A stretch of DNA of 64,000 bases from Podarcis bocagei. Taxonomy: Eukaryota. The first letter of the stretch is position 1, and each line of letters begins with the position of its first letter. A model generated the notes under the pieces. It saw only the letters and a list, made by a program, of their open reading frames with translations. It did no database searches and was not told where the DNA came from. A program made the translations under genes and the position numbers. Below, one piece after another: positions 4,101-24,135 of this stretch. The DNA lies in the NCBI GenBank assembly GCA_964188305.1, contig OZ076885.1; one strand, written 5' to 3'.

Positions 4101-7100
4101 CAAGGAGGATCACAATAATTTAAAATACAACATTAAAAACCATTTAAAACAAATTATAGTCACACGAATAGTATGGCTCCTCAAAAGAATTACCTCAAGT
4201 ATTGACGTGTCAAACTAAAGAAAAGAGATTAAAAAATGGTACTGCTGTGGACTGAGAGGGTAGCCATTTTTTAAAAAAGCTAAACAAATGTTCTCACATT
4301 GAACTATTACACCAGGGGTGTGCTTAGCCTCCAAATCATTAGAATATTAAGATAAAGAAATTAGGGGTCACAGAATTGTAGAATTGAAAGGGGCTACCAG
4401 AATCCTATTGCAGTCCAATGCAGGAATCTTTTGCCAAGTGTGAGGCTTGAATCCACAACCCTGAGTTTAAGAGCCTCATGCTTTACCAACTGAGCTATTC
4501 CAGGGTGTTACAGACAGGGTGAAGGGGTATGTCCCTCTTCACCATATAATGATAAAATGGGGCAGAGAATGAAAGGAAGAGTCTACCTCTTCCTGCCCCT
4601 ACCTGGGTGAAGGAGGGCCAGAAATTAAACTGCATGGACAAGATGTGCTGCTGTATAGATGTTTCCACTGGGCAAGTTGAGAGGAGAATGATCTGGTGAG
4701 CTCCAGGTGCAATATACCCACAGTTGGGCTTCACTAGGATGGAAGGACACTTCTCCCGGCTTAGGCTGAAGCTTATGGCAGTGCTACCCACGTTGGAGAG
4801 CAGCATGCTGCGATACGTGGTGATGTTTGGGCTCACCGGAGGGAAGACCTAGAAGACAGGAAGAGGTTTTGGTTGGAGGAATAACTCATCTGCATTATTC
4901 TCTTCTTAGCATCTCTGCCTTGAATAGCCAGTTGGGAAAGGCTGCACTTCTTCAAAAGACAAAGAAAACAACGAGGGCCACAAAAAATGCATAAAATCCG
5001 ACGCACTTTCCAAGATCACGTCCATGAGTTTAACGTTCCTACCCCTTTTATTGACTGGTGTAGAAGAACAAAATTAAAATCCCATGCATGCACAGCTACC
5101 CAATGATTACAATCCTGGAGTCTTTTGCAAGCTACACCTGTGTAAAAATTAACCTCATTTTGGAAGGGAGGGGGTGATTCAGAGGTGACGTACAGATGCA
5201 CATGCAAAGGGAAGTGTGCACACATGATTCTATTGTGGAGTTACCTCAGCTTCCTGCCATACTCTCACAGGACACAAACTTGGGGTTTCTGTCTTGCTTT
5301 CCAAGCACCTTGCCTATTTATCTGATCAAACATTTGTTCAGCACTGTTTTTAAGGGGGGGGGGGAGTTTTAAAATAGTTTTATGCTTTAAAGCCTGCTCT
5401 GGGTGTGTGGGGGCGGGGGAGAAGATTTAATGATTGACATAAAGGCTGGCCGATCAGCAATGTGCACAGCCTTTTCAAGTGCAAATTGGAAGTATGGGTT
5501 TCCCCTGAGCTTAAATGGACCAAAGCACAAGTGTGCGTCCACAGCAAGCTCACCACTCAAATGTTGTAAGTCTGTACACACCCAAATAGAATTAAAGGAG
5601 GTATGGTTTAGTTCAAAAACCCAGGCGTGAACAAGTGCCTCCTGTTGTAAAGAATAGGAAAAATGGCCTCCTTTGTTATTGTTCCCATTTTACAGATGGG
5701 CAAACTTTGACTCCAGAAATAAAGGGAGGGCCTGCAAATATGCTTTTACCATACTTTAAAACTGGCAGGTATTTCCCCTTGGAGGTGGACCCCTTGTTGA
5801 CCTCTGCTGTCACTGACTGGGTTGAGGCACCAGCCGAGACATGCTAACCCAGAAACTCTACTAAGGAGAAAATAATAATTTCCCCCAAAATAGAAGAAGA
5901 AAGGGAAGAGATCAAGAAAGCCACTCCAATTTCTACTTTATCAGGAAAGTACGCAATGCAAGGCTCTGGCTAGGTCTGTAAGTACACCAAAGCAGAAAGA
6001 ATGCTGGAGTGACTGAATGAGCCCTCAATCCGGTATGCCTAGATCAGCAAGTGCTCATCTCTGTGGCCACTGGGTGTCCTCATCATGACTTTCCAGAATT
6101 TGTTCCTTTCTGGAAAACGGAAAGAATAGAAACCAACATCTCATTATTGCAGGGAAACAAAAGTAAGATTGTAAAACACATTGCAGACACACAAAACTAA
6201 CAATGAATCCTTTCTACTTTGCAGGCAGTAGATGAGAAACACCCCACCCCAGAAGGCGAAGACTATCCCTCTCACCTTGTGACAGTCCAAGTTGTACTTT
6301 GGGATAAAGTGCTGCCGCCCAGGTTGAAAAGTGTGTCCGCGCAAGGAGATGGCTAAGTCCCAGGATGGGCACATGGTGATGGGCTCCTCAATGTTGTTGA
6401 AGTTCCGCAACACCTGCCAGCAACAAACAAAATATTATTAATTTTAAGATTTGTTAGTCGCTTTAACCTGCCAAAGACAAGCCAAAGTGACTTACAACCA
6501 AACTAGAGTATGCTGGGATCTCTCTGATGAGCAGCACAATACAGCAGGGCTTCATCTGTGTTCTACCTTAATGCCCTGCCATGGGGTTCCAAGCCAGAAT
6601 TTTGTATCAGAAAGAGAACAAAACTGCCCTTCAGCAGGAATCCCATCACTAATCATCATTTCTGTTTTTAAATCTGTTCCCTCTTGTCTTCTCAGCGGAT
6701 GTGGCAATTTAACATTTTGCTAGAGAGCGCTTTTGCCAAAAGGTTCTGTACTAGCCAGTCAACCAGCCCACATTGTGATGACTGAACCATCTTTTTTTTT
6801 CTTGCTGTCCTCATGACCAGGGGAAATTCTGAACCCAGGACAATGGGACCATACATTTAAGCAAATGCACTTTAAGCACATGGCTTCGCCCCAAAAATCC
6901 TGGAAACAGTAATTTGTTGGGGGTGCTGGGTATTCTAGCTCTGTGAGGACGGAACGACAGTTTCTTAGGAGGAAGTCATAGGCTTTAAAAGTGCATTGAT
7001 TGTGCTTTAAATATATGGTGGGGATCTGCCGAGGCCCGAATTTCTGTGCCATAAATGTCAATGCTTTGGACACCAAATTTCTACTCACCTTATAGAAGGC

Positions 7101-10100: not shown

Positions 10101-13100
10101 CACAAGAAAAAACACGATCACGAAGCACTACTTCCTTTGCTCTCTCAATCCTGAATGGGGCACTGACCTGCCGAGAGACAGAAAGTGTTATCCTTCCACT
10201 CACTGAGGAGAGAAAAGCCTACAGCTTAGGCCAATCCTCTAAACTGGCAGTTTTTAATCTGATGGAAACTTTGCTACATTCCCACACAAAACACTCATAA
10301 TCCCCTTTGAGTAATTGGTGATGCATCTGGAAACCAGCAGTCTTAGCTTCTGAGACACTGTATTGCATGAATATAGGAGTTAAAAAGAAGAAGCCACCGC
10401 CTTTTTGGCCCTGTGCCTATAATGCCAGGGAAACTTCAGACAGAGACCAAAGACTTCAGCAGAATGGAAACTCACTAGCATCTGCCTGCCCTCTCTTTCA
10501 GGAGAGATCCATTCTACAACCAAGTGTCTCCATTAAATCCTATGTCCAGGCTCCTGCCATTCTTGACAGCTGAACTCTCTGCAGAGACTATAAATTCCCC
10601 TCAAAATTCCCAAGCAAAGGTTGCCACCTACTGTGTACATCTAGAGAAAACTTCCACATTGTGCAGATGCTTTCAGAGTGTTGCTGGAAGTGTGGTATTC
10701 AAAGAATAATAACTTAAAATAATTTATTATGGCAAATGTAAAGTATACAGTCAATGTTTACAGTTGCTGTTTACAATTAAGTCGACACAATTTCGAGAAT
10801 GGCAAAAAGTCTTGTCACAATTCATATGGCAGGGGAAAAGACGCAGGATAAAATTTCAACTATTGACTGATAAGAAAGAGGAGGATTCTTGGTGCCAAAT
10901 TTAAAGCTTTATTATGAAGCATCTTGCTTATGTTGGATAAAAGATTGGATATTATTGGAAAACACGGACCTGCTGGATCTAGAAGGGTATAATAATAGAT
11001 ATGGATGGCACTCCTATTTATGGTATAACAAGGTGAAAATACATAGAGGATTTGTAAATCATATAATTAGGGGTGCTTTATATGTTCGGGCAAATAGCAG
11101 GATTTACGTTAAATAAGAGCAAAACCAAAGTGTTGGGGGGAAATTTAAATAATGAGGAGAAAAAAATCCTTCAGGAAAAGACAGGCCTTGTTTTTGTGAA
11201 GAAAGTGAAATATTTGGGTATGAATTTATCGGTAAAAATTTTGAATTTATACAAAGATAATTATGAAAAATTATGGAATGAAATTAAGAGAGATCTTGAG
11301 GTTTGGTCAAATCTAAAATTGTCATTAATGGGCCAAATGTCGGTGGTTAAGATGAATGTATTGCCAAAGATGTTGTTTTTATTCCAAGCTTTACCAATCA
11401 TTGATAATCTAAGATGTTTTAAAGACTGGCAGAAAACACTGTCTAAATTCATCTGGCAGGGGAAAAAACCCAGAATTAAATATAAAATATTAACAGATAC
11501 AAAAGAGAGAAGGGGATTCTCCCTGCCAGATTTGAAGATATATTTTGAAGCTGCAGCTTTCTGCTGGATCAAGGAATGGATTCAACTAGACAATGTTGAT
11601 GTGTTAGATTTGGAAGGATTTGACAATGTATTTGGTTGGCATGCATATTTATGGTATGATAAAATATCGGCTCATAAAGGTTTTAAAAATCATGTAATTA
11701 GAAAATCTTTATATAATGTTTGGATAAGATATAAAGATCTCTTAGAAAGGAAAACACCCAGGTGGCTTTCACCAATGAAAGCAAAGGCACAGAAAAAGCT
11801 GAATATGGAGAGTAAATGGTTGAAATATGATGATTTATTGTTGGAAGATAATGAAGGATTTAAATTGAGACCATTTGATCAAATTAAAGATAGACTGGAT
11901 GGATGGTTACAATATTATCAGATTAATGAATTGTACAAGCTTGATAAGAAAATTGGTTTTGCGATAGAAAAATCCAAATTGGAAACGGAATTGTTAGACA
12001 CCAATGTTAAAAATCTCTCTAAAATGTATAATTTATTGTTGGAATGGCATACAAAGGATGAACAAGTTAAATCTGTGATGATTGACTGGGCAAGAGATGT
12101 TGGACACAATATAATGTTGGAAGATTGGAAAAGGCTGTGGAAGAAAGGGGTTAAGTTTACTGCATGTACTGTATTAAAAGAAAATATTACGAAAATGATG
12201 TATAGATGGTACTTAACCCCGATGAAATTAGCAAAGATCTATCATACAAATGATAATCTATGTTGGAAATGCAAAGAAAAAGAAGGTACTTTTTATCATA
12301 TGTGGTGGACATGCCCTAAGGTATAATACTTCTGGGAAAAGATTTATAATGAGTTGAATTTTTTTTTGAAAAATACATTTATTAAGAAACCAGAAGCCTT
12401 TCTTCTTGGAATAATAGGACTGGAAATGCCCCCCAAAAGATGTTAGATTGTTTTCATATGCCGCTACAGCAGCAAGACTTTTATTAGCCAAAAACTGGAA
12501 ATCGCAAGAAATTCCAACAATAGAAGATTGGCAGATGAAGATGTTGGATTTTTTAGAGCTGGCTGACCTGACTGGAAGAATCCGCAACCAGAAAGAAGAG
12601 GAGACACAAGAGGATAGGAAGAAATTTAAAGAATATTTAGCTAAATATTGCAATATAAGATAATTAGATAATACTTGGAAGTAACAAATAGGTTTAGGGG
12701 TAGAATAAGAATATGCGGCAGTAAATATTAATGATTTGAATAATAATAAAGGAGAAGAGCTTAGTTAATGAAAGGCGTTAATATTAGAAATATGAAATTG
12801 GAGAACTGTTATACAAGTGATATAATGAAATTTAGATAGAGGGGATTCGAGGAAGTCAGTTACCAATGTTAAGAGATTTAGGTATTTGAAGTAATAAATT
12901 TCTTTTGTGTTTAGTTTATTGTCTTTGTTGTGAGTTTTGTCATGTTTTTTTATTTTTTCTGTGTGGAAAATCTGGAAAATCAATTTTAAAAAAATTGGGG
13001 GGGGGGATAAAAATATAGGCATGTTGTAGGCACTGACAAAGCAGAATATGGACATGTCCTCTTGGGCACACATCTAGGTCATGAGAATATATCTGTTTGA

Positions 13101-19264: not shown

Positions 19265-20248
19265 GAGACGCGGAAATGGCCTCGCCGAGTAAGTAAGTAC
19301 GGCCGCCGTGGAGGGACATTCCTATTACAAAAGGGCGTTTGAGGGCCGTCCCGGGAAAACGAGACCAAGGTGTGCGCGTCGTGAATGAGGCAAGCTGGGT
19401 AGCAGCAGGTCCAGGAGGTTTAGTTAAAAAATAAGAAGGAAGGAAGGAGATCAGACTCCACCCGCTCCGCTCCCCGTACCTCATAACGAAGCTAGCCTGT
19501 AGAGAGAGCCCTCGAGCAAGAAGTGGCATTTCTCCTCCCCCCCAAAAAGTGGCTTCTTGTCCAAACCGCCGCCAACTTCAAGAGGGTTCTGTTCCGTGTA
19601 ACCCCAGCATTTATTAATTTTTGCCAGCTGCGGCTCATTGAACTAGATGCAGCTGTTCCTTAGCCTGATCCCGCTCAGGTGCTTGAAGAAGCGGGTGGGT
19701 GTGTCGCGGGCGGAGCGGGGAGATCTAATGATCTTCTAAAATGCTGTGGTCCTCCAGATGTTTTCACTCCCAACGCCCAGCAGCCCCAGCTAGTATGACT
19801 AATGGCCCAGAGAGAGACCATGGGAGTTGAAGTCCAGCAACATGTGAGGGGGCAAAGCTGGGGTAGATTAATGGTTTCTTCTTTTGGTGTAAGATTTTGC
19901 ATAGAGGTTTTGCATGGATGAAGGAATAGATACAAATAATGGGTTTAAATAGCAGTGTGACAGTGCATTTTTTTAAAAAAATGCTTCAAACTGAGAGCAA
20001 TAGTTTGATGTGGAACATATTTCCATAACCAGCCCTTTTTTCATATGATATTTAACCCCTAGATCTCACTCCCAGTGTTTGGTAGATTTTAAGTGATAAA
20101 GTGCATAAACAAAACATACAACGTACTCAATACCTTGTGTGTCTGATGCATAGTCATGAGGTTTTCAAATTCCATTTTTTCTCATACATGGCCATATTTT
20201 GTTACAAAACTATTGACTGTATTTATTATATGTAAATATTGGAAGATA

Positions 20249-20496
20249 CAGTGGTACCTCGGATTAAGTACTTAATTCGTTCCGGAGGTCCGTACTTAAC
20301 CTGAAACTGTTCTTAACCTGAAGCACCACTTTAGCTAATGGGGCCTCCAGCTGCTGCTGCTGCTGCGCCGCTGGAGCACGATTTCTGTTTTCATCCTGAA
20401 GCAAAGTTCTTAACCTGAAGCACTATTTCTGGGTTAGCGGAGTCTGTAACCTGAAGCATATGTAACCTGAAGCGTATGAAACCCGAGGTGCCACTG
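20249..20496. mobile_element. Tc1/mariner-pogo (Tigger-like) MITE
   Basis: TIR CAGTGGTACCTCGG / CCGAGGTGCCACTG, TA TSD, internal TTAACCTGAA repeats; second copy at 60231-60442. Confidence 0.85.
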
Positions 20497-20880
20497 TATA
20501 CTGGAAGTGCACACTGTGTGCAAGAGACAGTTTTGTGGGACACAGGGAATGCAAAGATGGGATGGGGAAGAGGGTTTATATACCAGTTTGATCTCTGGGT
20601 TGTAGTCAGCCGGGTCCTGCTCAGAATAAACCCACTGAAATTAATCAACCTGAGCTGGTCAAGTCCATTAATTTTAATAAGTCTACTCTGAGTAGGACTA
20701 ACATTAGATACAACCTTTTGGCTAATTAGATTCCCCCTCCTAAAAAATGTGGCAGCTGTGATCTTAGTCATTCATTGATCAATTCTAGATGTTTGCTGCA
20801 AAGCTGGGTGATAAAAATATTATCAGCTTTTGTTCACCTGACAAAAACTACATTGGGACAAAAGTCCTTTTTTTTTTTTA

Positions 20881-22696
20881 GGGACTTCCGGGTTGGCGCG
20901 ATCTGGAAATGGCGGATTCCCTCCGAGCTGCGGAGGGAATCGGCTCAACTGAGGACGGGTCTTGCCGCGCCGGCGACGCGGGGACCCTTAGAAACCGCAG
21001 GCGGTGAAGCCTGCGGACTGAAGACTCGGTGGGCGCCTTAAGCGCCCCCCCGACCCACGAAGAGCCTTTTTAAAGGCTGCGGAGAGGGTACGGAGGGTGG
21101 CGTGGCGCTGAGAGTCGATCGCTACCTCGGTTGAGCGGAGCCGCGAGCCATGACTGGAGAGCGCTGACTTCCTTCCTTGAAATTCGGACTGAAAAAGAAT
21201 AACCCGTGAGTAAGACGGAATTGGACTTTAAGAATATTTTCTTGTGAATTCGAGACGACCGGGGGGGGGTGCTAAAAGGAAGTCCGCACCCCCCCCTCTT
21301 GCAGACGATCTAAAGCAACGATAGAAGAACTAAGCTGGAGAGCCTACCCTTTGTGGGGTGAGTTAAAAAAGACATTAACTTCCAAGATTTGGCAAAAAGA
21401 AATTTTGAGCTGGAGTGAAAGAGTGGAATTTTAGAAGCTTCTTTTCTGTTGTATACAACCCCCCCTCCCGGGCCCGGGAGCGTCCTGTGTTTGAGCTTGG
21501 GGAAGAGGATTACGGAGTTTGACAGCTGTCAAAGCTGTCAAACAGACAGTTTAAAGTTGAAAAATTGTCATCTAAGATCCCTCTGGACTAAAAATTAGTT
21601 AAAATTGAACTAAAATTGTTGGAAACAAAGTAACAACAACAAGTCAGAGGATTATTGGAGAAAGATTATTAAGTAACCAGATTCCCTCTAGGGGGAACTC
21701 TGTGACATTACAATGGCTGTGGATGGAAAGTTACTAGTGGAAATTGAAAGAATGTTTCATTTGGTGGGAATCTTACAAGAGCAGAGTCTGGCTATGAATA
21801 AACAACTCATGACCTTGACTTCTGGAACAAGCAGCTCTGCTGAATGTATTGAGGATCTGAATGAGAAAGAATCTGCAGCTGAATCGGAAATGATAACTCA
21901 AGAAGTGGACGAGACTAAACAAGGAAAAGAGAAAGCAAAGATGGAAAGTACCAACCAGAAGCTTACACCAGTGGAATATAAGCAAGGAGACTTTTGGATT
22001 ACATTGACTACAAATCTGCGAAAGATGCAAAAGACGAAGGAGGAGGCCTCGGGAGTATATGGAATACAGGAACTCAAAATAAAGAAGAAATATGATTGGG
22101 GCCTCCACTCTGACTCTGAAGATGCATGGCCTGCGGAACTTTTGCAGCAGTTGTTTTCAAATGTCCTTGTGGGAAGAGAACCTGGTTTGATGGGGACAGA
22201 ACTCCTTCGAGATTCGACGACCAATATCAAGGACTACCAACAAGACCGGCGGAGAGGGACTGAAAGAGATTTGAAAGCCTCGGACGTGAGGAATCCAGGC
22301 TAAGAACTGTTATTTGGACATGTATTGGGGAAGGGACAAAAACCGGGGATGGGAGGGAGGGAAGAATAACTTTAAAAACACTCAGGACCTTTGGGTGTAG
22401 TTAATACGACTTTTATCTAAGACAAAATGGGAAATCGATGGAAGGGAATTTGAGTCCAACTTAGAAAAAATTTATTTCTTTTCTTTTTTTTATAAAAGAG
22501 GTAATATTAAGATGGTTAGAAATTTTAATTTGCTGACACAATTATGGGAATTGGGATGCATGAAGGGGGGTGGGGGGAAGTCAAGGAACAAGGTTAAGAA
22601 AGTAGGACTTTCTGAAATTATACATGTTATTGTCTTGTCCCTTCTCTGTGTGTTATGTCTTTATAAAAGGTGAAAAACCAATAAAAATTATTATAA
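20881..22696 (+). mobile_element. Full-length non-autonomous L1-derived (HAL1-like) retroelement with a single ORF
   Basis: Starts GGGACTTCCGG...AAATGGCG (L1-type 5' end), CpG-rich 5' UTR, ORF 21713-22303, G-rich 3' UTR, AATAAA and A-tail, TSD AAAAGTCC(T)nA at 20860-80 and 22697-711; no EN/RT. Confidence 0.75.
21713..22303 (+). CDS. 196-aa intact ORF of the HAL1-like element (coiled-coil-like N-terminus, ORF1p-like position)
   Basis: ACA-ATG-G Kozak context, uninterrupted, E/K-rich helical N-terminal half; GVYGIQE only faintly recalls the ORF1 RRM IxGxPE motif. Confidence 0.55.
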   Translation: MAVDGKLLVEIERMFHLVGILQEQSLAMNKQLMTLTSGTSSSAECIEDLNEKESAAESEMITQEVDETKQGKEKAKMESTNQKLTPVEYKQGDFWITLTTNLRKMQKTKEEASGVYGIQELKIKKKYDWGLHSDSEDAWPAELLQQLFSNVLVGREPGLMGTELLRDSTTNIKDYQQDRRRGTERDLKASDVRNPG

Positions 22697-22704
22697 AAAA
22701 GTCC

Positions 22705-23093
22705 TTTTTTAAATTTTATTTTTCAGTTTAACAACAATAATCATACATTAAAAAGATAGATACATACATATTTATTTTGACTCCCCTTCCCCCCTTCCCT
22801 GGTTTCTTATAAAAGATTTTTTAAAACTGCATCTCCCCCTTAACACCTTTAACTTTGTTACTCTCTGGATTTCTTTTAAATTAACCTTTTAACTGCTTTG
22901 TTTTTATATTAATCCTGCTAATGTGTTTAATTGTTCCTCAGTCTATATTAAAAGTTCTTTTTTGCCATTTCTGCATAGTCCACTAACTTTGCCTGCCATT
23001 CTTCCTTAGTTGGGACAGTATCTTCTTTCCATCCCTGCACTGTAGATAAAATTGTTTATGTATGCAATTTTTTTCTCATCTTTCGGTATCTCT
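22705..23093 (-). mobile_element. Older 5'-truncated L1 3' end (antisense)
   Basis: Minus strand encodes QGWKEDTVPTKEEWQAKLVDYAEMAK (L1 ORF2 C-terminus); degenerate TSD CA(T/G)TGGGACAAAAGT(C/T)C at 20851-67 and 23094-110. Confidence 0.75.
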
Positions 23094-23189
23094 CAGTGGG
23101 ACAAAAGTTCAATAGGTTTAAAAGCAAATAGCTGCCCACCCCATTCAAGATGTCCCTATGCCATTTGAAGGCAATAGATGGACTGTTCA

Positions 23190-24135
23190 ATATCCTTGGT
23201 GTAATCCTTGATGCCTCCCTTTCCATGGAGGTGCAGGTTACTGCAACAGCCAAGGCGACATTTTTCCATCTTTGCCGCATTAAGCAGCTGGTCCCTTACC
23301 TTTCCTGCCCCGATCTGGCCACAGTGATCCATGCGATGGTCACCTCCAGGCTTGACTACTGTAATTCGCTCTATGCGGGGCTGCCCTTGAAACTGTCCCA
23401 CAAACTCCAGCGGGTGCAGAATGCTGCAGCGAGGCTCCTCATGGGGTCCCTGCCATGGGAGCATATTCACCCAGTGCTTTACCAATTGCACTGGCTCCCG
23501 ATGGAGCATAGGGTCAGATTCAAGGTGCTGGTATTGACCTTTAAAACCCTTTGTGGCTTAGGGCCCTCGTATTTACGGGACCGCCTCTCCTGGCATGCCC
23601 CACAGAGGACCTTAAGGTCCATGAATAACCATAATTTAGAGGTTACGGGCCCTAAGGAAGTCAGACTATCCTCCACCAGGGCCTTTTCAGTGATGGCTCT
23701 GACCTGGTGGAATGCTCTGTCGCATGAGACTAGGGCCCTTCAGGATTTAACCTCCTTCCATCAGGCCTGTAAGACAGAGCTATTCCACCTGGCCTTTAAT
23801 TTGAATTCAGCCTGATTTTTTATTTCCCTTCTCTTCCCTCCCCCTCCCTTTTTATGAAGATTACCTGCTCTGAGACCACACAGCTAATTCTCCCCTGGCC
23901 TCCTCGCTGGCCCAAGTGGGACTAATTCAGCCAGCTAGCCCTGGTGACTATCTAATGCTTATTAGATGGATTTCCCCCAAATTGATTTTTGAATTTTGAA
24001 TTTTATTGTTATTCGTGTTTTTATAATGTAGTTTATGCTGCTTTTACAATTAAGTGTTTGAAATTTGTTGTTAGCTGCCCTGAGCCCGGTTTTCTGAACC
24101 GGGAAGGGCGGAGTATAAATAAAAAATTATTTTTA
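23190..24135 (+). mobile_element. 5'-truncated L2-clade LINE (RT C-terminus and 3' UTR)
   Basis: LGVILD.SLSME.QV...SRLDYCNSLYAGLP...LQRVQNAAARLL...LHWLP; 3' end gctgccctgagcccgg...gggcgg..tataaataaa. Confidence 0.88.

What the first reader, a model, noticed from the sequence alone, without database searches (positions are those of the whole stretch)
20881..22696. Complete 1.8-kb 'half-L1'-like retroelement with one intact ORF that I could not assign
Seen: an L1-type start (GGGACTTCCGG...AAATGGCG), an ~830-bp CpG-rich 5' UTR, a stop-free 196-aa ORF, and a 3' UTR with the same G-run+GGAAGTC motif as the L1 3' ends at ~12850 and ~31040. It also has AATAAA, an A-tail and a TSD on both sides, but no endonuclease or RT. 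Known: HAL1 elements (ORF1 only) are described mainly from mammals. Inference: this is a young squamate non-autonomous family mobilised by L1 ORF2p. Its protein is much shorter than ORF1p and has no clear RRM/CTD, so it could be a reduced ORF1p that co-assembles with or competes against L1 ORF1p. It sits 1.6 kb upstream of the CFAP65 promoter.
Basis: partly seen in the sequence, partly recalled or inferred. Interest (0 to 1): 0.8.

Follow-up and report, generated by a model that had tools for sequence, protein, structure and literature searches.

The report
Lizard L1 parasite with own protein
This is a young, complete copy of an abundant lizard "half-L1" retroposon that keeps an L1 promoter and tail but has no reverse transcriptase. 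It carries one small conserved protein that is not a recognisable L1 ORF1 protein, so it probably borrows the L1 copying enzyme.

Summary
Window 20874-22696 (+) is a complete 1.8-kb poly(A) retroposon between 14-bp target-site duplications (AAAAGTCCTTTTTT). Contigs from two related species carry the precise empty site, so it is a recent, lineage-specific insertion.

- **Family:** it is not a one-off deleted L1. Copies with the same architecture but different flanks and duplications occur in Podarcis lilfordi and in several sequencing runs. Summed contig depth suggests roughly a thousand copies. The scan's first readers noted at least 17 similar elements elsewhere in this genome.
- **L1 origin:** its first ~330 nt and last ~170 nt are L1-derived. 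The head matches the published lizard L1 start and also sits on a mini-L1 that carries an ORF2 tail. The tail profile hits true L1 3' ends.
- **The protein:** the 196-aa ORF belongs to an orphan family of 170-215 aa. Members share N- and C-terminal motifs down to ~28% identity, and dN/dS is 0.25-0.48.
- **What it is not:** it has no detectable RRM/CTD and no detectable homology to ORF1p or ORF2p. One distant subfamily links it to the ORF1 coiled coil.

Best reading: a HAL1-like, non-autonomous L1 derivative mobilised in trans by L1 ORF2p, and a new variant of a known kind. The protein's function and its expression are unproven.

The parts
20860..20873 (+). 5' target-site duplication AAAAGTCCTTTTTT
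   Evidence: It is identical to 22697-22710. The empty-site joint in X7 has 14 letters that fit either side.
20874..20880 (+). Seven extra letters (TTTTTTA) between the duplication and the canonical element start. Their origin is unknown: they could be T-run slippage, a short 5' transduction or untemplated addition.
   Evidence: They are absent from the empty site. Other copies start directly at (G)ACTTCCGG.
20881..21712 (+). L1-type 5' UTR and presumed internal promoter. It holds an ACTTCCGG (ETS-like) plus AATGGCGG (YY1-like) start at 20884-20915 and a CpG island in the first ~440 nt.
   Evidence: The start motif is unique in the window and not expected by chance. It matches the published lizard L1 clade 1 consensus GACTTCCGGTGN8ATGGCG apart from spacing (PMC5381506). 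A profile of the first 330 nt hits a mini-L1 at L008:348-680 with E 4e-55. ATG is depleted: 2 observed against 9.3 +/- 2.3 expected.
21713..22303 (+). ORF of 196 aa plus stop, an orphan family. It has an N-terminal amphipathic helix, an acidic middle, and a conserved basic C-terminal module ending in RGTERDLKASDVRNPG.
   Evidence: dN/dS is 0.25-0.48 with confidence intervals below 1. The start context ACAATGG is conserved. There is no Pfam or PDB match.
22304..22519 (+). Variable proximal part of the 3' UTR
   Evidence: This is the least conserved 3' segment among copies, at 51-79% identity.
22520..22696 (+). L1-type 3' tail: G-run plus GGAAGTC, TGAAATTATACATG, AATAAA (22680-22685) and a short A tail
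   Evidence: It aligns with L1 3' ends. The nhmmer tail profile hits L012:10136-10310 (E 2e-12), window 12839-12991 (E 3e-5) and L008:2264-2411 (E 2e-7).
22697..22710 (+). 3' target-site duplication AAAAGTCCTTTTTT

Best explanation
The element is a young, full-length copy of an abundant lacertid family of non-autonomous, L1-derived retroposons that resemble HAL1 in design.

**Proposed mechanism**
1. An L1-type internal promoter at the 5' end (ETS-like ACTTCCGG plus YY1-like AATGGCGG inside a CpG island) drives a 1.8-kb polyadenylated RNA.
2. The RNA is translated into a ~196-aa protein, helped by an ATG-poor leader and a good start context.
3. The protein most likely acts in cis on its own RNA, as a minimal RNP or chaperone factor that stands in for ORF1p.
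4. L1 ORF2p supplied in trans by autonomous L1s engages the poly(A) and L1-type tail. It nicks at TTTT/G, reverse-transcribes by target-primed reverse transcription, and leaves a 14-bp duplication.

**Shown:** the anatomy, the insertion event, the family, the L1 origin of head and tail, and coding constraint on the ORF.

**Inferred:** promoter activity, translation, what the protein does, and the use of ORF2p in trans.
For: - **Insertion event:** two related species have the precise empty site, and the duplication is 14 bp.
- **Family:** L008:3930-5723 in P. lilfordi is a full-length copy, 83% identical over element positions 4-1810, with its own duplication AACT(G/A)TTTCTATC. Four more copies end at the same 3' terminus with unrelated flanks.
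- **Abundance:** summed contig depth in the element is about 6e4-4.4e5 against 75-88 in the unique flank of the same run.
- **L1 head:** the published lizard L1 start consensus matches. The same head sits on a 2.1-kb mini-L1 whose ORF ends in the L1 ORF2 C-terminus (WWTCPRIK...).
- **L1 tail:** the family tail profile hits true L1 3' ends at E 2e-12 and 3e-5.
- **Target site:** the nick is TTTT/G here and TT/AAAA in L008, as read.
- **ORF constraint:** 22 related proteins of 129-215 aa (most 170-215), representing 15 of the database's sequence clusters, share N- and C-terminal motifs down to ~28% identity. In four independent pairs dN/dS is 0.25-0.48 with bootstrap intervals below 1, while shifted frames give 0.5-1.0.
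- **Translation signals:** the leader is ATG-depleted and the start context is conserved.
Against: - No autonomous partner with the same head and a full ORF1/ORF2 was in my hands, so the parent L1 lineage is unidentified.
- The protein has no detectable homology to ORF1p, ORF2p or any Pfam/PDB family. Its model is confident only for residues ~3-40. An RNA-binding or ORF1p-like role is therefore conjecture.
- The copies used for dN/dS were found through called intact ORFs, which biases towards preserved frames. Two genomic copies are broken: L008 has a frameshift and L001b has a 3' truncation.
- RNA-seq reads from a related species cover family sequence on both strands at low depth. With ~1e3 copies, this cannot be told from intronic or read-through RNA.
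- The copy number rests on summed contig depth, which the tool itself warns is not a copy number.
Confidence: 0.77

Rival explanations
1. The elements are mobilised purely as RNAs with an L1 head and tail, like SVA or processed transcripts. The ORF is a decaying relic that plays no part in mobilisation. Its apparent conservation reflects youth of the copies and ascertainment of intact ORFs.
For: All proteins came from ORF callers, so only open frames were sampled. Two of the genomic copies I could read are disrupted. The excess of third-position differences is modest: 0.22 and 0.24 at positions 1 and 2 against 0.31 at position 3. No protein domain is recognisable.
Against: Subfamilies whose ORF middle is only 36-43% identical at the DNA level still hold an open frame of similar length with the same N- and C-terminal peptide motifs. 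That is hard to get without selection. dN/dS is below 1 in all four independent pairs and higher in the shifted frames. The leader is ATG-depleted and the start context conserved.
Confidence: 0.12
2. The protein is not a helper but an antagonist. It would be a truncated, coiled-coil-bearing ORF1p descendant that co-assembles with or titrates L1 ORF1p or ORF2p. That would favour the parasite over its L1 host, or damp L1 activity.
For: [quoted passage not shown] The only confidently modelled part of the protein is an N-terminal helix with a/d-type hydrophobic spacing (my reading of the sequence). A distant subfamily (L001:2497-4146) has an N-part homologous to a lacertid L1 ORF1 coiled coil (BLASTP E 1e-8) and a C-part homologous to this family (HHalign probability 96%).
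Against: This family's own N-part shows no detectable similarity to the ORF1 coiled coil available to me (probability 0.3%). The self-association prediction gave no verdict. No interaction data exist.
Confidence: 0.1
3. It is a single ordinary L1 that suffered an internal deletion after insertion, or a processed pseudogene of a host gene.
For: No second copy lies in the 64-kb window. The ORF has no known family.
Against: The same 1.8-kb architecture, with the same ORF-to-3'UTR junction, recurs at other loci with different duplications and flanks. Contig depth is hundreds to thousands of times the single-copy level. The head and tail are L1 sequences, not host-gene UTRs.
Confidence: 0.01

Closest known systems
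HAL1 ('half-L1') elements of mammals (Smit 1999; Bao and Jurka 2010, as cited in PMC5753468)
   Same: Both are non-autonomous derivatives of L1 that keep L1 ends and a single ORF in the ORF1 position and lack ORF2. Both are multi-copy and flanked by target-site duplications. HAL1s arose independently several times.
   Different: HAL1 encodes ORF1p. This family's protein is about 200 aa, with no detectable RRM/CTD or Transposase_22 signal, and has its own conserved C-terminal module. It is found in lacertid lizards, not mammals. I found no description of such elements in squamates in the held literature. Repbase and Dfam could not be queried.
Lizard L1 clade 1 (Anolis L1 families; Boissinot and Sookdeo 2016, PMC5381506)
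   Same: The 5' extremity motif is GACTTCCGG...ATGGCG. The 5' UTR is long and CpG-rich, and is conserved across otherwise divergent families. The tail is poly(A).
   Different: There is no ORF2 and no recognisable ORF1 domains. The 5' UTR is 0.83 kb rather than ~1.3 kb. The spacing between the two start motifs is 14-15 nt in the lacertid copies I read, rather than the published N8.
Internally deleted 'mini-L1' with an in-frame ORF1-ORF2 fusion (L008:348-2485 in P. lilfordi; protein P0072 of P. raffonei)
   Same: Same head (E 4e-55) and related tail (E 2e-7), a similar size of 2.1 kb, a poly(A) tail and no RT.
   Different: Its ORF is plainly L1: an ORF1 N-terminus and coiled coil joined to the last ~100 residues of ORF2. 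The window element's ORF matches neither part.
Truncated ORF1 proteins of defective human L1 loci (PMC5605252)
   Same: Short proteins translated from L1-type transcripts that retain an N-terminal helical region.
   Different: Those are accidental truncations of individual copies. Here the short protein is the conserved product of a whole family.

Membership tests
HAL1-type non-autonomous L1 derivative | The ends (5' UTR/promoter and 3' end) derive from L1 | tested here: met
   The head profile hits a mini-L1 carrying an ORF2 tail (E 4e-55). The tail profile hits L1 3' ends (E 2e-12 and 3e-5). The start motif matches the published lizard L1 consensus.
HAL1-type non-autonomous L1 derivative | Lacks ORF2 (endonuclease and reverse transcriptase) | tested here: met
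   The element is 1.8 kb in all. Its only ORF of 100 aa or more on the element strand is 196 aa with no Pfam hit.
HAL1-type non-autonomous L1 derivative | The single ORF encodes ORF1p (coiled coil + RRM + CTD) | tested here: not met
   None of 17 members hits Transposase_22 or related models, even at E up to 10. The profile finds no ORF1p in PDB. HHalign against a lacertid ORF1 coiled coil gives probability 0.3%. The models contain no beta strands. A full-length lacertid ORF1p was not available for comparison.
HAL1-type non-autonomous L1 derivative | Amplified as a family by retrotransposition (many copies, each with its own duplication and poly(A) end) | tested here: met
   Searches show distinct flanks and duplications. 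One search shows depth hundreds to thousands of times the single-copy level and the empty site.
L1-mediated (TPRT) insertion | T-rich/A nick site, 7-20-bp duplication, 3' poly(A), precise empty site | tested here: met
   Bottom-strand nick at TTTT/G, 14-bp duplication, AATAAA plus A tail. The empty site is present in two species.
L1-mediated (TPRT) insertion | Mobilised by L1 ORF2p | not testable with these tools
   This needs a retrotransposition assay.
L1 ORF1p (Pfam Transposase_22) | Sequence match to the RRM/CTD models | tested here: not met
SINE | Small-RNA-derived (tRNA/7SL/5S) pol III head, non-coding | tested here: not met
   There is no Rfam match at E up to 1 in 20000-23500. The element carries a selected ORF and an L1 pol II-type head.

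The most novel reading that the evidence does not exclude
The ~200-aa protein is not a degenerate ORF1p. It would be a distinct, minimal retroposon protein: an oligomerising N-terminal helix plus a basic C-terminal RNA-binding module. A non-autonomous lineage evolved it and needs it in cis to capture L1 ORF2p. That would make this a protein-coding parasite of L1 that sits between SINEs and LINEs and has diversified into deep subfamilies of its own.
Probability: 0.25. Interest if true: 0.75.

Novelty: new variant of a known kind. Interest (0 to 1): 0.55.

Why it matters
HAL1 elements show that an L1 parasite can profit from keeping ORF1p. This family would show how little of an ORF1-position protein is enough. 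The RRM and CTD, which are required for ORF1p function in mammalian L1, are not detectable here. Yet the frame and two short terminal modules have been kept through divergence down to ~28% protein identity, in a family of roughly a thousand copies that is still inserting in living lacertid species.

That makes a long-standing question testable in a natural system: what ORF1p-type proteins contribute in cis to capturing ORF2p. It also supplies a young, polymorphic insertion class that could serve as a marker in lacertid population genomics. For annotation, these ORFs already appear as 'hypothetical proteins' in Podarcis gene sets and should be flagged as transposon-derived.

Tried and rejected
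**Searches on the protein that found nothing**
- Pfam on the ORF and on 17 family members: chance-level hits only.
- PDB sequence and profile search: nothing.
- ESM Atlas look-alikes: best score 0.88, unrelated fungal clusters.
- Exact look-up of the window's protein: not on record.
- Two AlphaFold2 runs (9 and 17 sequences): mean pLDDT 48-50, with only helix 3-40 confident. I ran no fold search because the matches would be meaningless.
- Complex prediction with three copies of residues 1-90: no verdict. This is evidence neither for nor against self-association.
- Profile search of 1.84 billion representatives: only 10 proteins, all 129-215 aa, and no ORF1p or ORF2p.

**Tests of where the ORF came from**
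- *The C-terminus is the last codons of L1 ORF2* (a lead from other first-reader notes). The C-termini of 60 squamate L1 ORF2 fragments and all six frames of the L1s I held do not match the family profile. A DNA profile of the C-terminal module hits no L1. Rejected for the L1 lineages available.
- *The N-part is the ORF1 coiled coil.* HHalign probability is 0.2-0.3%. Not supported directly.

**Other attempts**
- Second copy in the window: none.
- Rfam on the region: none.
- RNA structure in the head: the hairpins are conserved but show essentially no covariation, so I make no claim.
- RNA-seq of a related species: reads fall on both strands at low depth, and one strand-biased patch probably comes from a single copy. 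Inconclusive for expression.
- The L1 locus fetched to obtain a full-length lacertid L1 (L012) proved 5'-truncated, so I obtained no ORF1 or 5' UTR of an autonomous element.
- The Bao and Jurka 2010 paper is not held. The supplementary L1 consensus file of PMC5381506 is not held.
- Dfam and Repbase cannot be queried with these tools.

Full report
**1. What is in the sequence**

- It starts GGGACTTCCGGGTTGGCGCGATCTGGAAATGGCGG.
- The leader is 832 nt. Its first ~440 nt form a CpG island with 42 CpGs and CpG o/e of 0.8-1.5 in the first 400 nt, against 0.08 in the flanks.
- An ATG ORF runs from 21713 to 22303 (196 aa).
- A 393-nt 3' UTR holds a G-run followed by GGAAGTC, then AATAAA (22680-22685) and a short A tail.
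- The duplication is exactly AAAAGTCCTTTTTT, at 20860-20873 and 22697-22710.
- Seven extra letters (TTTTTTA) separate the 5' copy from the canonical start.
- The window has no N and no second copy of the element.

**2. It is a true, recent insertion**

I laid Logan contigs of four runs on 20400-23200.
- One contig of organism E (record 17) covers 20666-20859 and continues at 22697-22904. The joint skips 1837 nt, and 14 letters fit either side.
- One contig of organism B (record 9) covers 20563-20860 and then 22698-23106.
- The best holder, organism A (probably the window's species), has junction contigs that end at the element's borders with no mismatches.
- So the site is empty in two relatives and filled here, and the 14 bp is a real target-site duplication.
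- Read on the bottom strand, the first nick was at TTTT/G, which is the L1 endonuclease type of site. This is inference plus established L1 biology.

**3. It is one copy of a family**

The protein word search found eight relatives of 129-201 aa, two of them in the Podarcis lilfordi assembly. Fetching their DNA gave the following.
- L008:3930-5723 is a full-length copy, 83% identical over element positions 4-1810. It has its own 13-bp duplication, AACT(G/A)TTTCTATC.
- L001:4149-5521 is a 3'-truncated copy.
- Logan contigs L002, L005 and L007 end at the same 3' terminus (TATAAAA.GTGAAAA.C.AATAAAAATT plus a short A run) and continue into unrelated flanks.

Summed contig depth inside the element is 6e4-4.4e5 in run X1, against 75-88 in the unique flank. 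The tool warns that this is not a copy number, so I take it only as an order of magnitude: hundreds to a few thousand.

The ORF middle is about 900 times the flank depth in organism A but only about 50 times in organism E. This suggests lineage-specific amplification of this subfamily.

The scan's index lists at least 17 first-reader notes of ~1.8-kb RT-less elements with 193-201-aa ORFs elsewhere in this genome. Those are unchecked leads, but they fit. The scan has therefore met this family before on other DNA.

**4. Head and tail are L1**

- *Published consensus.* The start motif pair matches the consensus that Boissinot and Sookdeo give for Anolis L1 clade 1, GACTTCCGGTGN8ATGGCG, apart from spacing. 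They also report that lizard L1 5' UTRs are long, CpG-rich and conserved across divergent families, with the first ~120 bp most conserved (PMC5381506).
- *Mini-L1 with the same head.* An nhmmer profile of the family's first 330 nt hit L008:348-680 at E 4e-55. That is the start of a 2.14-kb poly(A) element. Its ORF joins an ORF1 N-terminus and coiled coil to the last ~100 residues of L1 ORF2 (WWTCPRIK...). The N-part is 63% identical to P0072 of P. raffonei. P0072 runs on into NLRIRALPE, the start of the ORF1p RRM as I know it from human ORF1p (that last point rests on my own knowledge).
- *Tail.* A profile of the family's last ~215 nt hit three L1-type 3' ends: the L1 in L012 just after its ORF2 stop (10136-10310, E 2e-12), the window's own L1 (12839-12991, E 3e-5), and the mini-L1 tail (E 2e-7).
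- *Conservation along the element.* The first 200 nt stay 71-78% identical even between subfamilies whose ORF middle is 36-43% identical. The last 113 nt of the ORF stay 57-72% identical.

**5. The ORF**

- *Size of the family.* A profile search of 1.84 billion representative proteins found ten proteins, all 129-215 aa. With cluster members there are 22 sequences.
- *Shared motifs.* They share an N-terminal MAxxGKLxAExxRxFxLVGxLQ and a C-terminal LLRDxxxNxKDYQQNRRRGTERDLRASDVRNPG. The middle is variable and acidic. Identity to the window protein falls to 27-31%.
- *Selection.* Nei-Gojobori dN/dS among eight copies is 0.25-0.7. In four independent pairs it is 0.25-0.48, with bootstrap 95% intervals below 1. 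The two shifted frames give 0.5-1.0. Third positions differ most.
- *Translation signals.* The 832-nt leader holds 2 ATGs against 9.3 +/- 2.3 in shuffles. The start context ATTACAATGGCT is conserved.
- *Caveat.* These copies were found through ORF callers, so open frames are over-represented. L008 and L001b are broken.

What the protein is remains open.
- No Pfam family is hit by any of 17 members.
- There is no PDB relative and no Atlas lead.
- AlphaFold2 is confident only for a helix at residues ~3-40, predicts no strands, and gives mean pLDDT 48-50.
- A three-copy complex prediction gave no verdict.
- HHalign against the lacertid ORF1 coiled coil gives probability 0.3%.
- The idea from other first-reader notes that the C-terminus is the end of ORF2 found no support. 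Sixty squamate ORF2 fragments and a DNA profile of the module against the L1s I held gave no match.

One bridge to ORF1 exists. An older, frame-shifted element at L001:2497-4146 has the family head (73% identity over 330 nt). Its N-part is homologous to the ORF1 coiled coil of P0072 (BLASTP E 1e-8; alignment). Its C-part is homologous to this family's C-terminal half (HHalign probability 96%, E 5e-9). This fits descent from ORF1 with heavy reduction and possibly mosaic evolution, but it does not prove either.

**6. How it most likely works**

- *Shown:* an L1-headed, L1-tailed, ORF2-less RNA-derived insertion, made at an L1-type target site, belonging to a large and recently active family whose ORF is under constraint.
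- *Inferred:* the head acts as an internal promoter, and the mRNA is translated. The protein binds its own RNA in cis, and L1 ORF2p supplied in trans carries out target-primed reverse transcription from the poly(A) and L1-type tail.
- *Alternative role:* the protein may antagonise or titrate L1 ORF1p. The precedent is truncated human ORF1p (PMC5605252). Nothing here tests it.

**7. Comparison and membership**

In design it works like HAL1: an L1 derivative with only the ORF1-position gene (PMC5753468). It meets the HAL1 criteria of L1-derived ends, absence of ORF2 and family amplification. It fails the criterion that the ORF encodes a recognisable ORF1p. I therefore file it as a new variant of a known kind, not a plain HAL1 member.

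I found no description of such elements in squamates in the held literature. Repbase and Dfam could not be searched, and the key HAL1 paper is not held. Prior description in those databases therefore cannot be excluded.

**8. Limits**

- I obtained no autonomous partner with this head.
- The species are coded.
- The copy number is rough.
- Expression is unproven.

Noticed in passing
L008:348-2485 (Podarcis lilfordi OX395132.1): A 2.14-kb poly(A) 'mini-L1'. It has the L1 head, then one ORF that joins an ORF1 N-terminus and coiled coil in frame to the last ~100 residues of ORF2, then the L1 3' UTR. An annotated P. raffonei protein (P0072, LOC128406054) is a similar ORF1-ORF2 fusion. This looks like a second class of RT-less L1 derivative in lacertids.
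   Followed up: partly
L001:2497-4146 (Podarcis lilfordi OX395126.1): An older element with the same head. Its ORF N-part resembles the L1 ORF1 coiled coil, and its C-part, after a frameshift, ends in GRDLRASDIRLPG like the family studied here. Its 3' part is interrupted by a younger copy of the 1.8-kb family inserted at 4149.
   Followed up: partly
window:20249-20499: A ~250-bp element with terminal inverted repeats (ACAGTGGTACCTCGG ... CCGAGGTGCCACTGTAT) and internal TAACCTGAAGC repeats. Part of it (20400-20493) has summed contig depth about 2e5 times the unique flank, and many RNA-seq reads. This looks like a very abundant MITE-like repeat.
   Followed up: no
window:6762-7451 (-): An ORF with a HYDIN/CFA65/VesB-like Ig domain (Pfam E 3e-5). 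This is consistent with a CFAP65 exon on the minus strand. The 5'-truncated L1 ending at ~12990 would then lie in an intron.
   Followed up: no
window:30876-31176: A short poly(A) retro-insert of ~270 bp, flanked by the duplication AGTCCCTCAGCTCCA. It has a GGGAAGTC plus long G-run 3' region. The tail profile did not match it significantly.
   Followed up: no
window:21207-21305: The 5' UTR holds a consensus-like splice donor (CCCGTGAGTAAG) and, ~90 nt on, a pyrimidine tract followed by CAG. The donor is conserved in distant subfamilies, but the acceptor is not. All copies retain the interval, so it is probably not spliced before retrotransposition.
   Followed up: no
window:22374-22561 as laid in run X23: RNA-seq reads of a related species cover this part of the 3' UTR on one strand only, and all carry A>T at 22469 (125 of 125 reads, 39 start sites). 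This probably means that one particular copy is embedded in an expressed transcript of that species.
   Followed up: no
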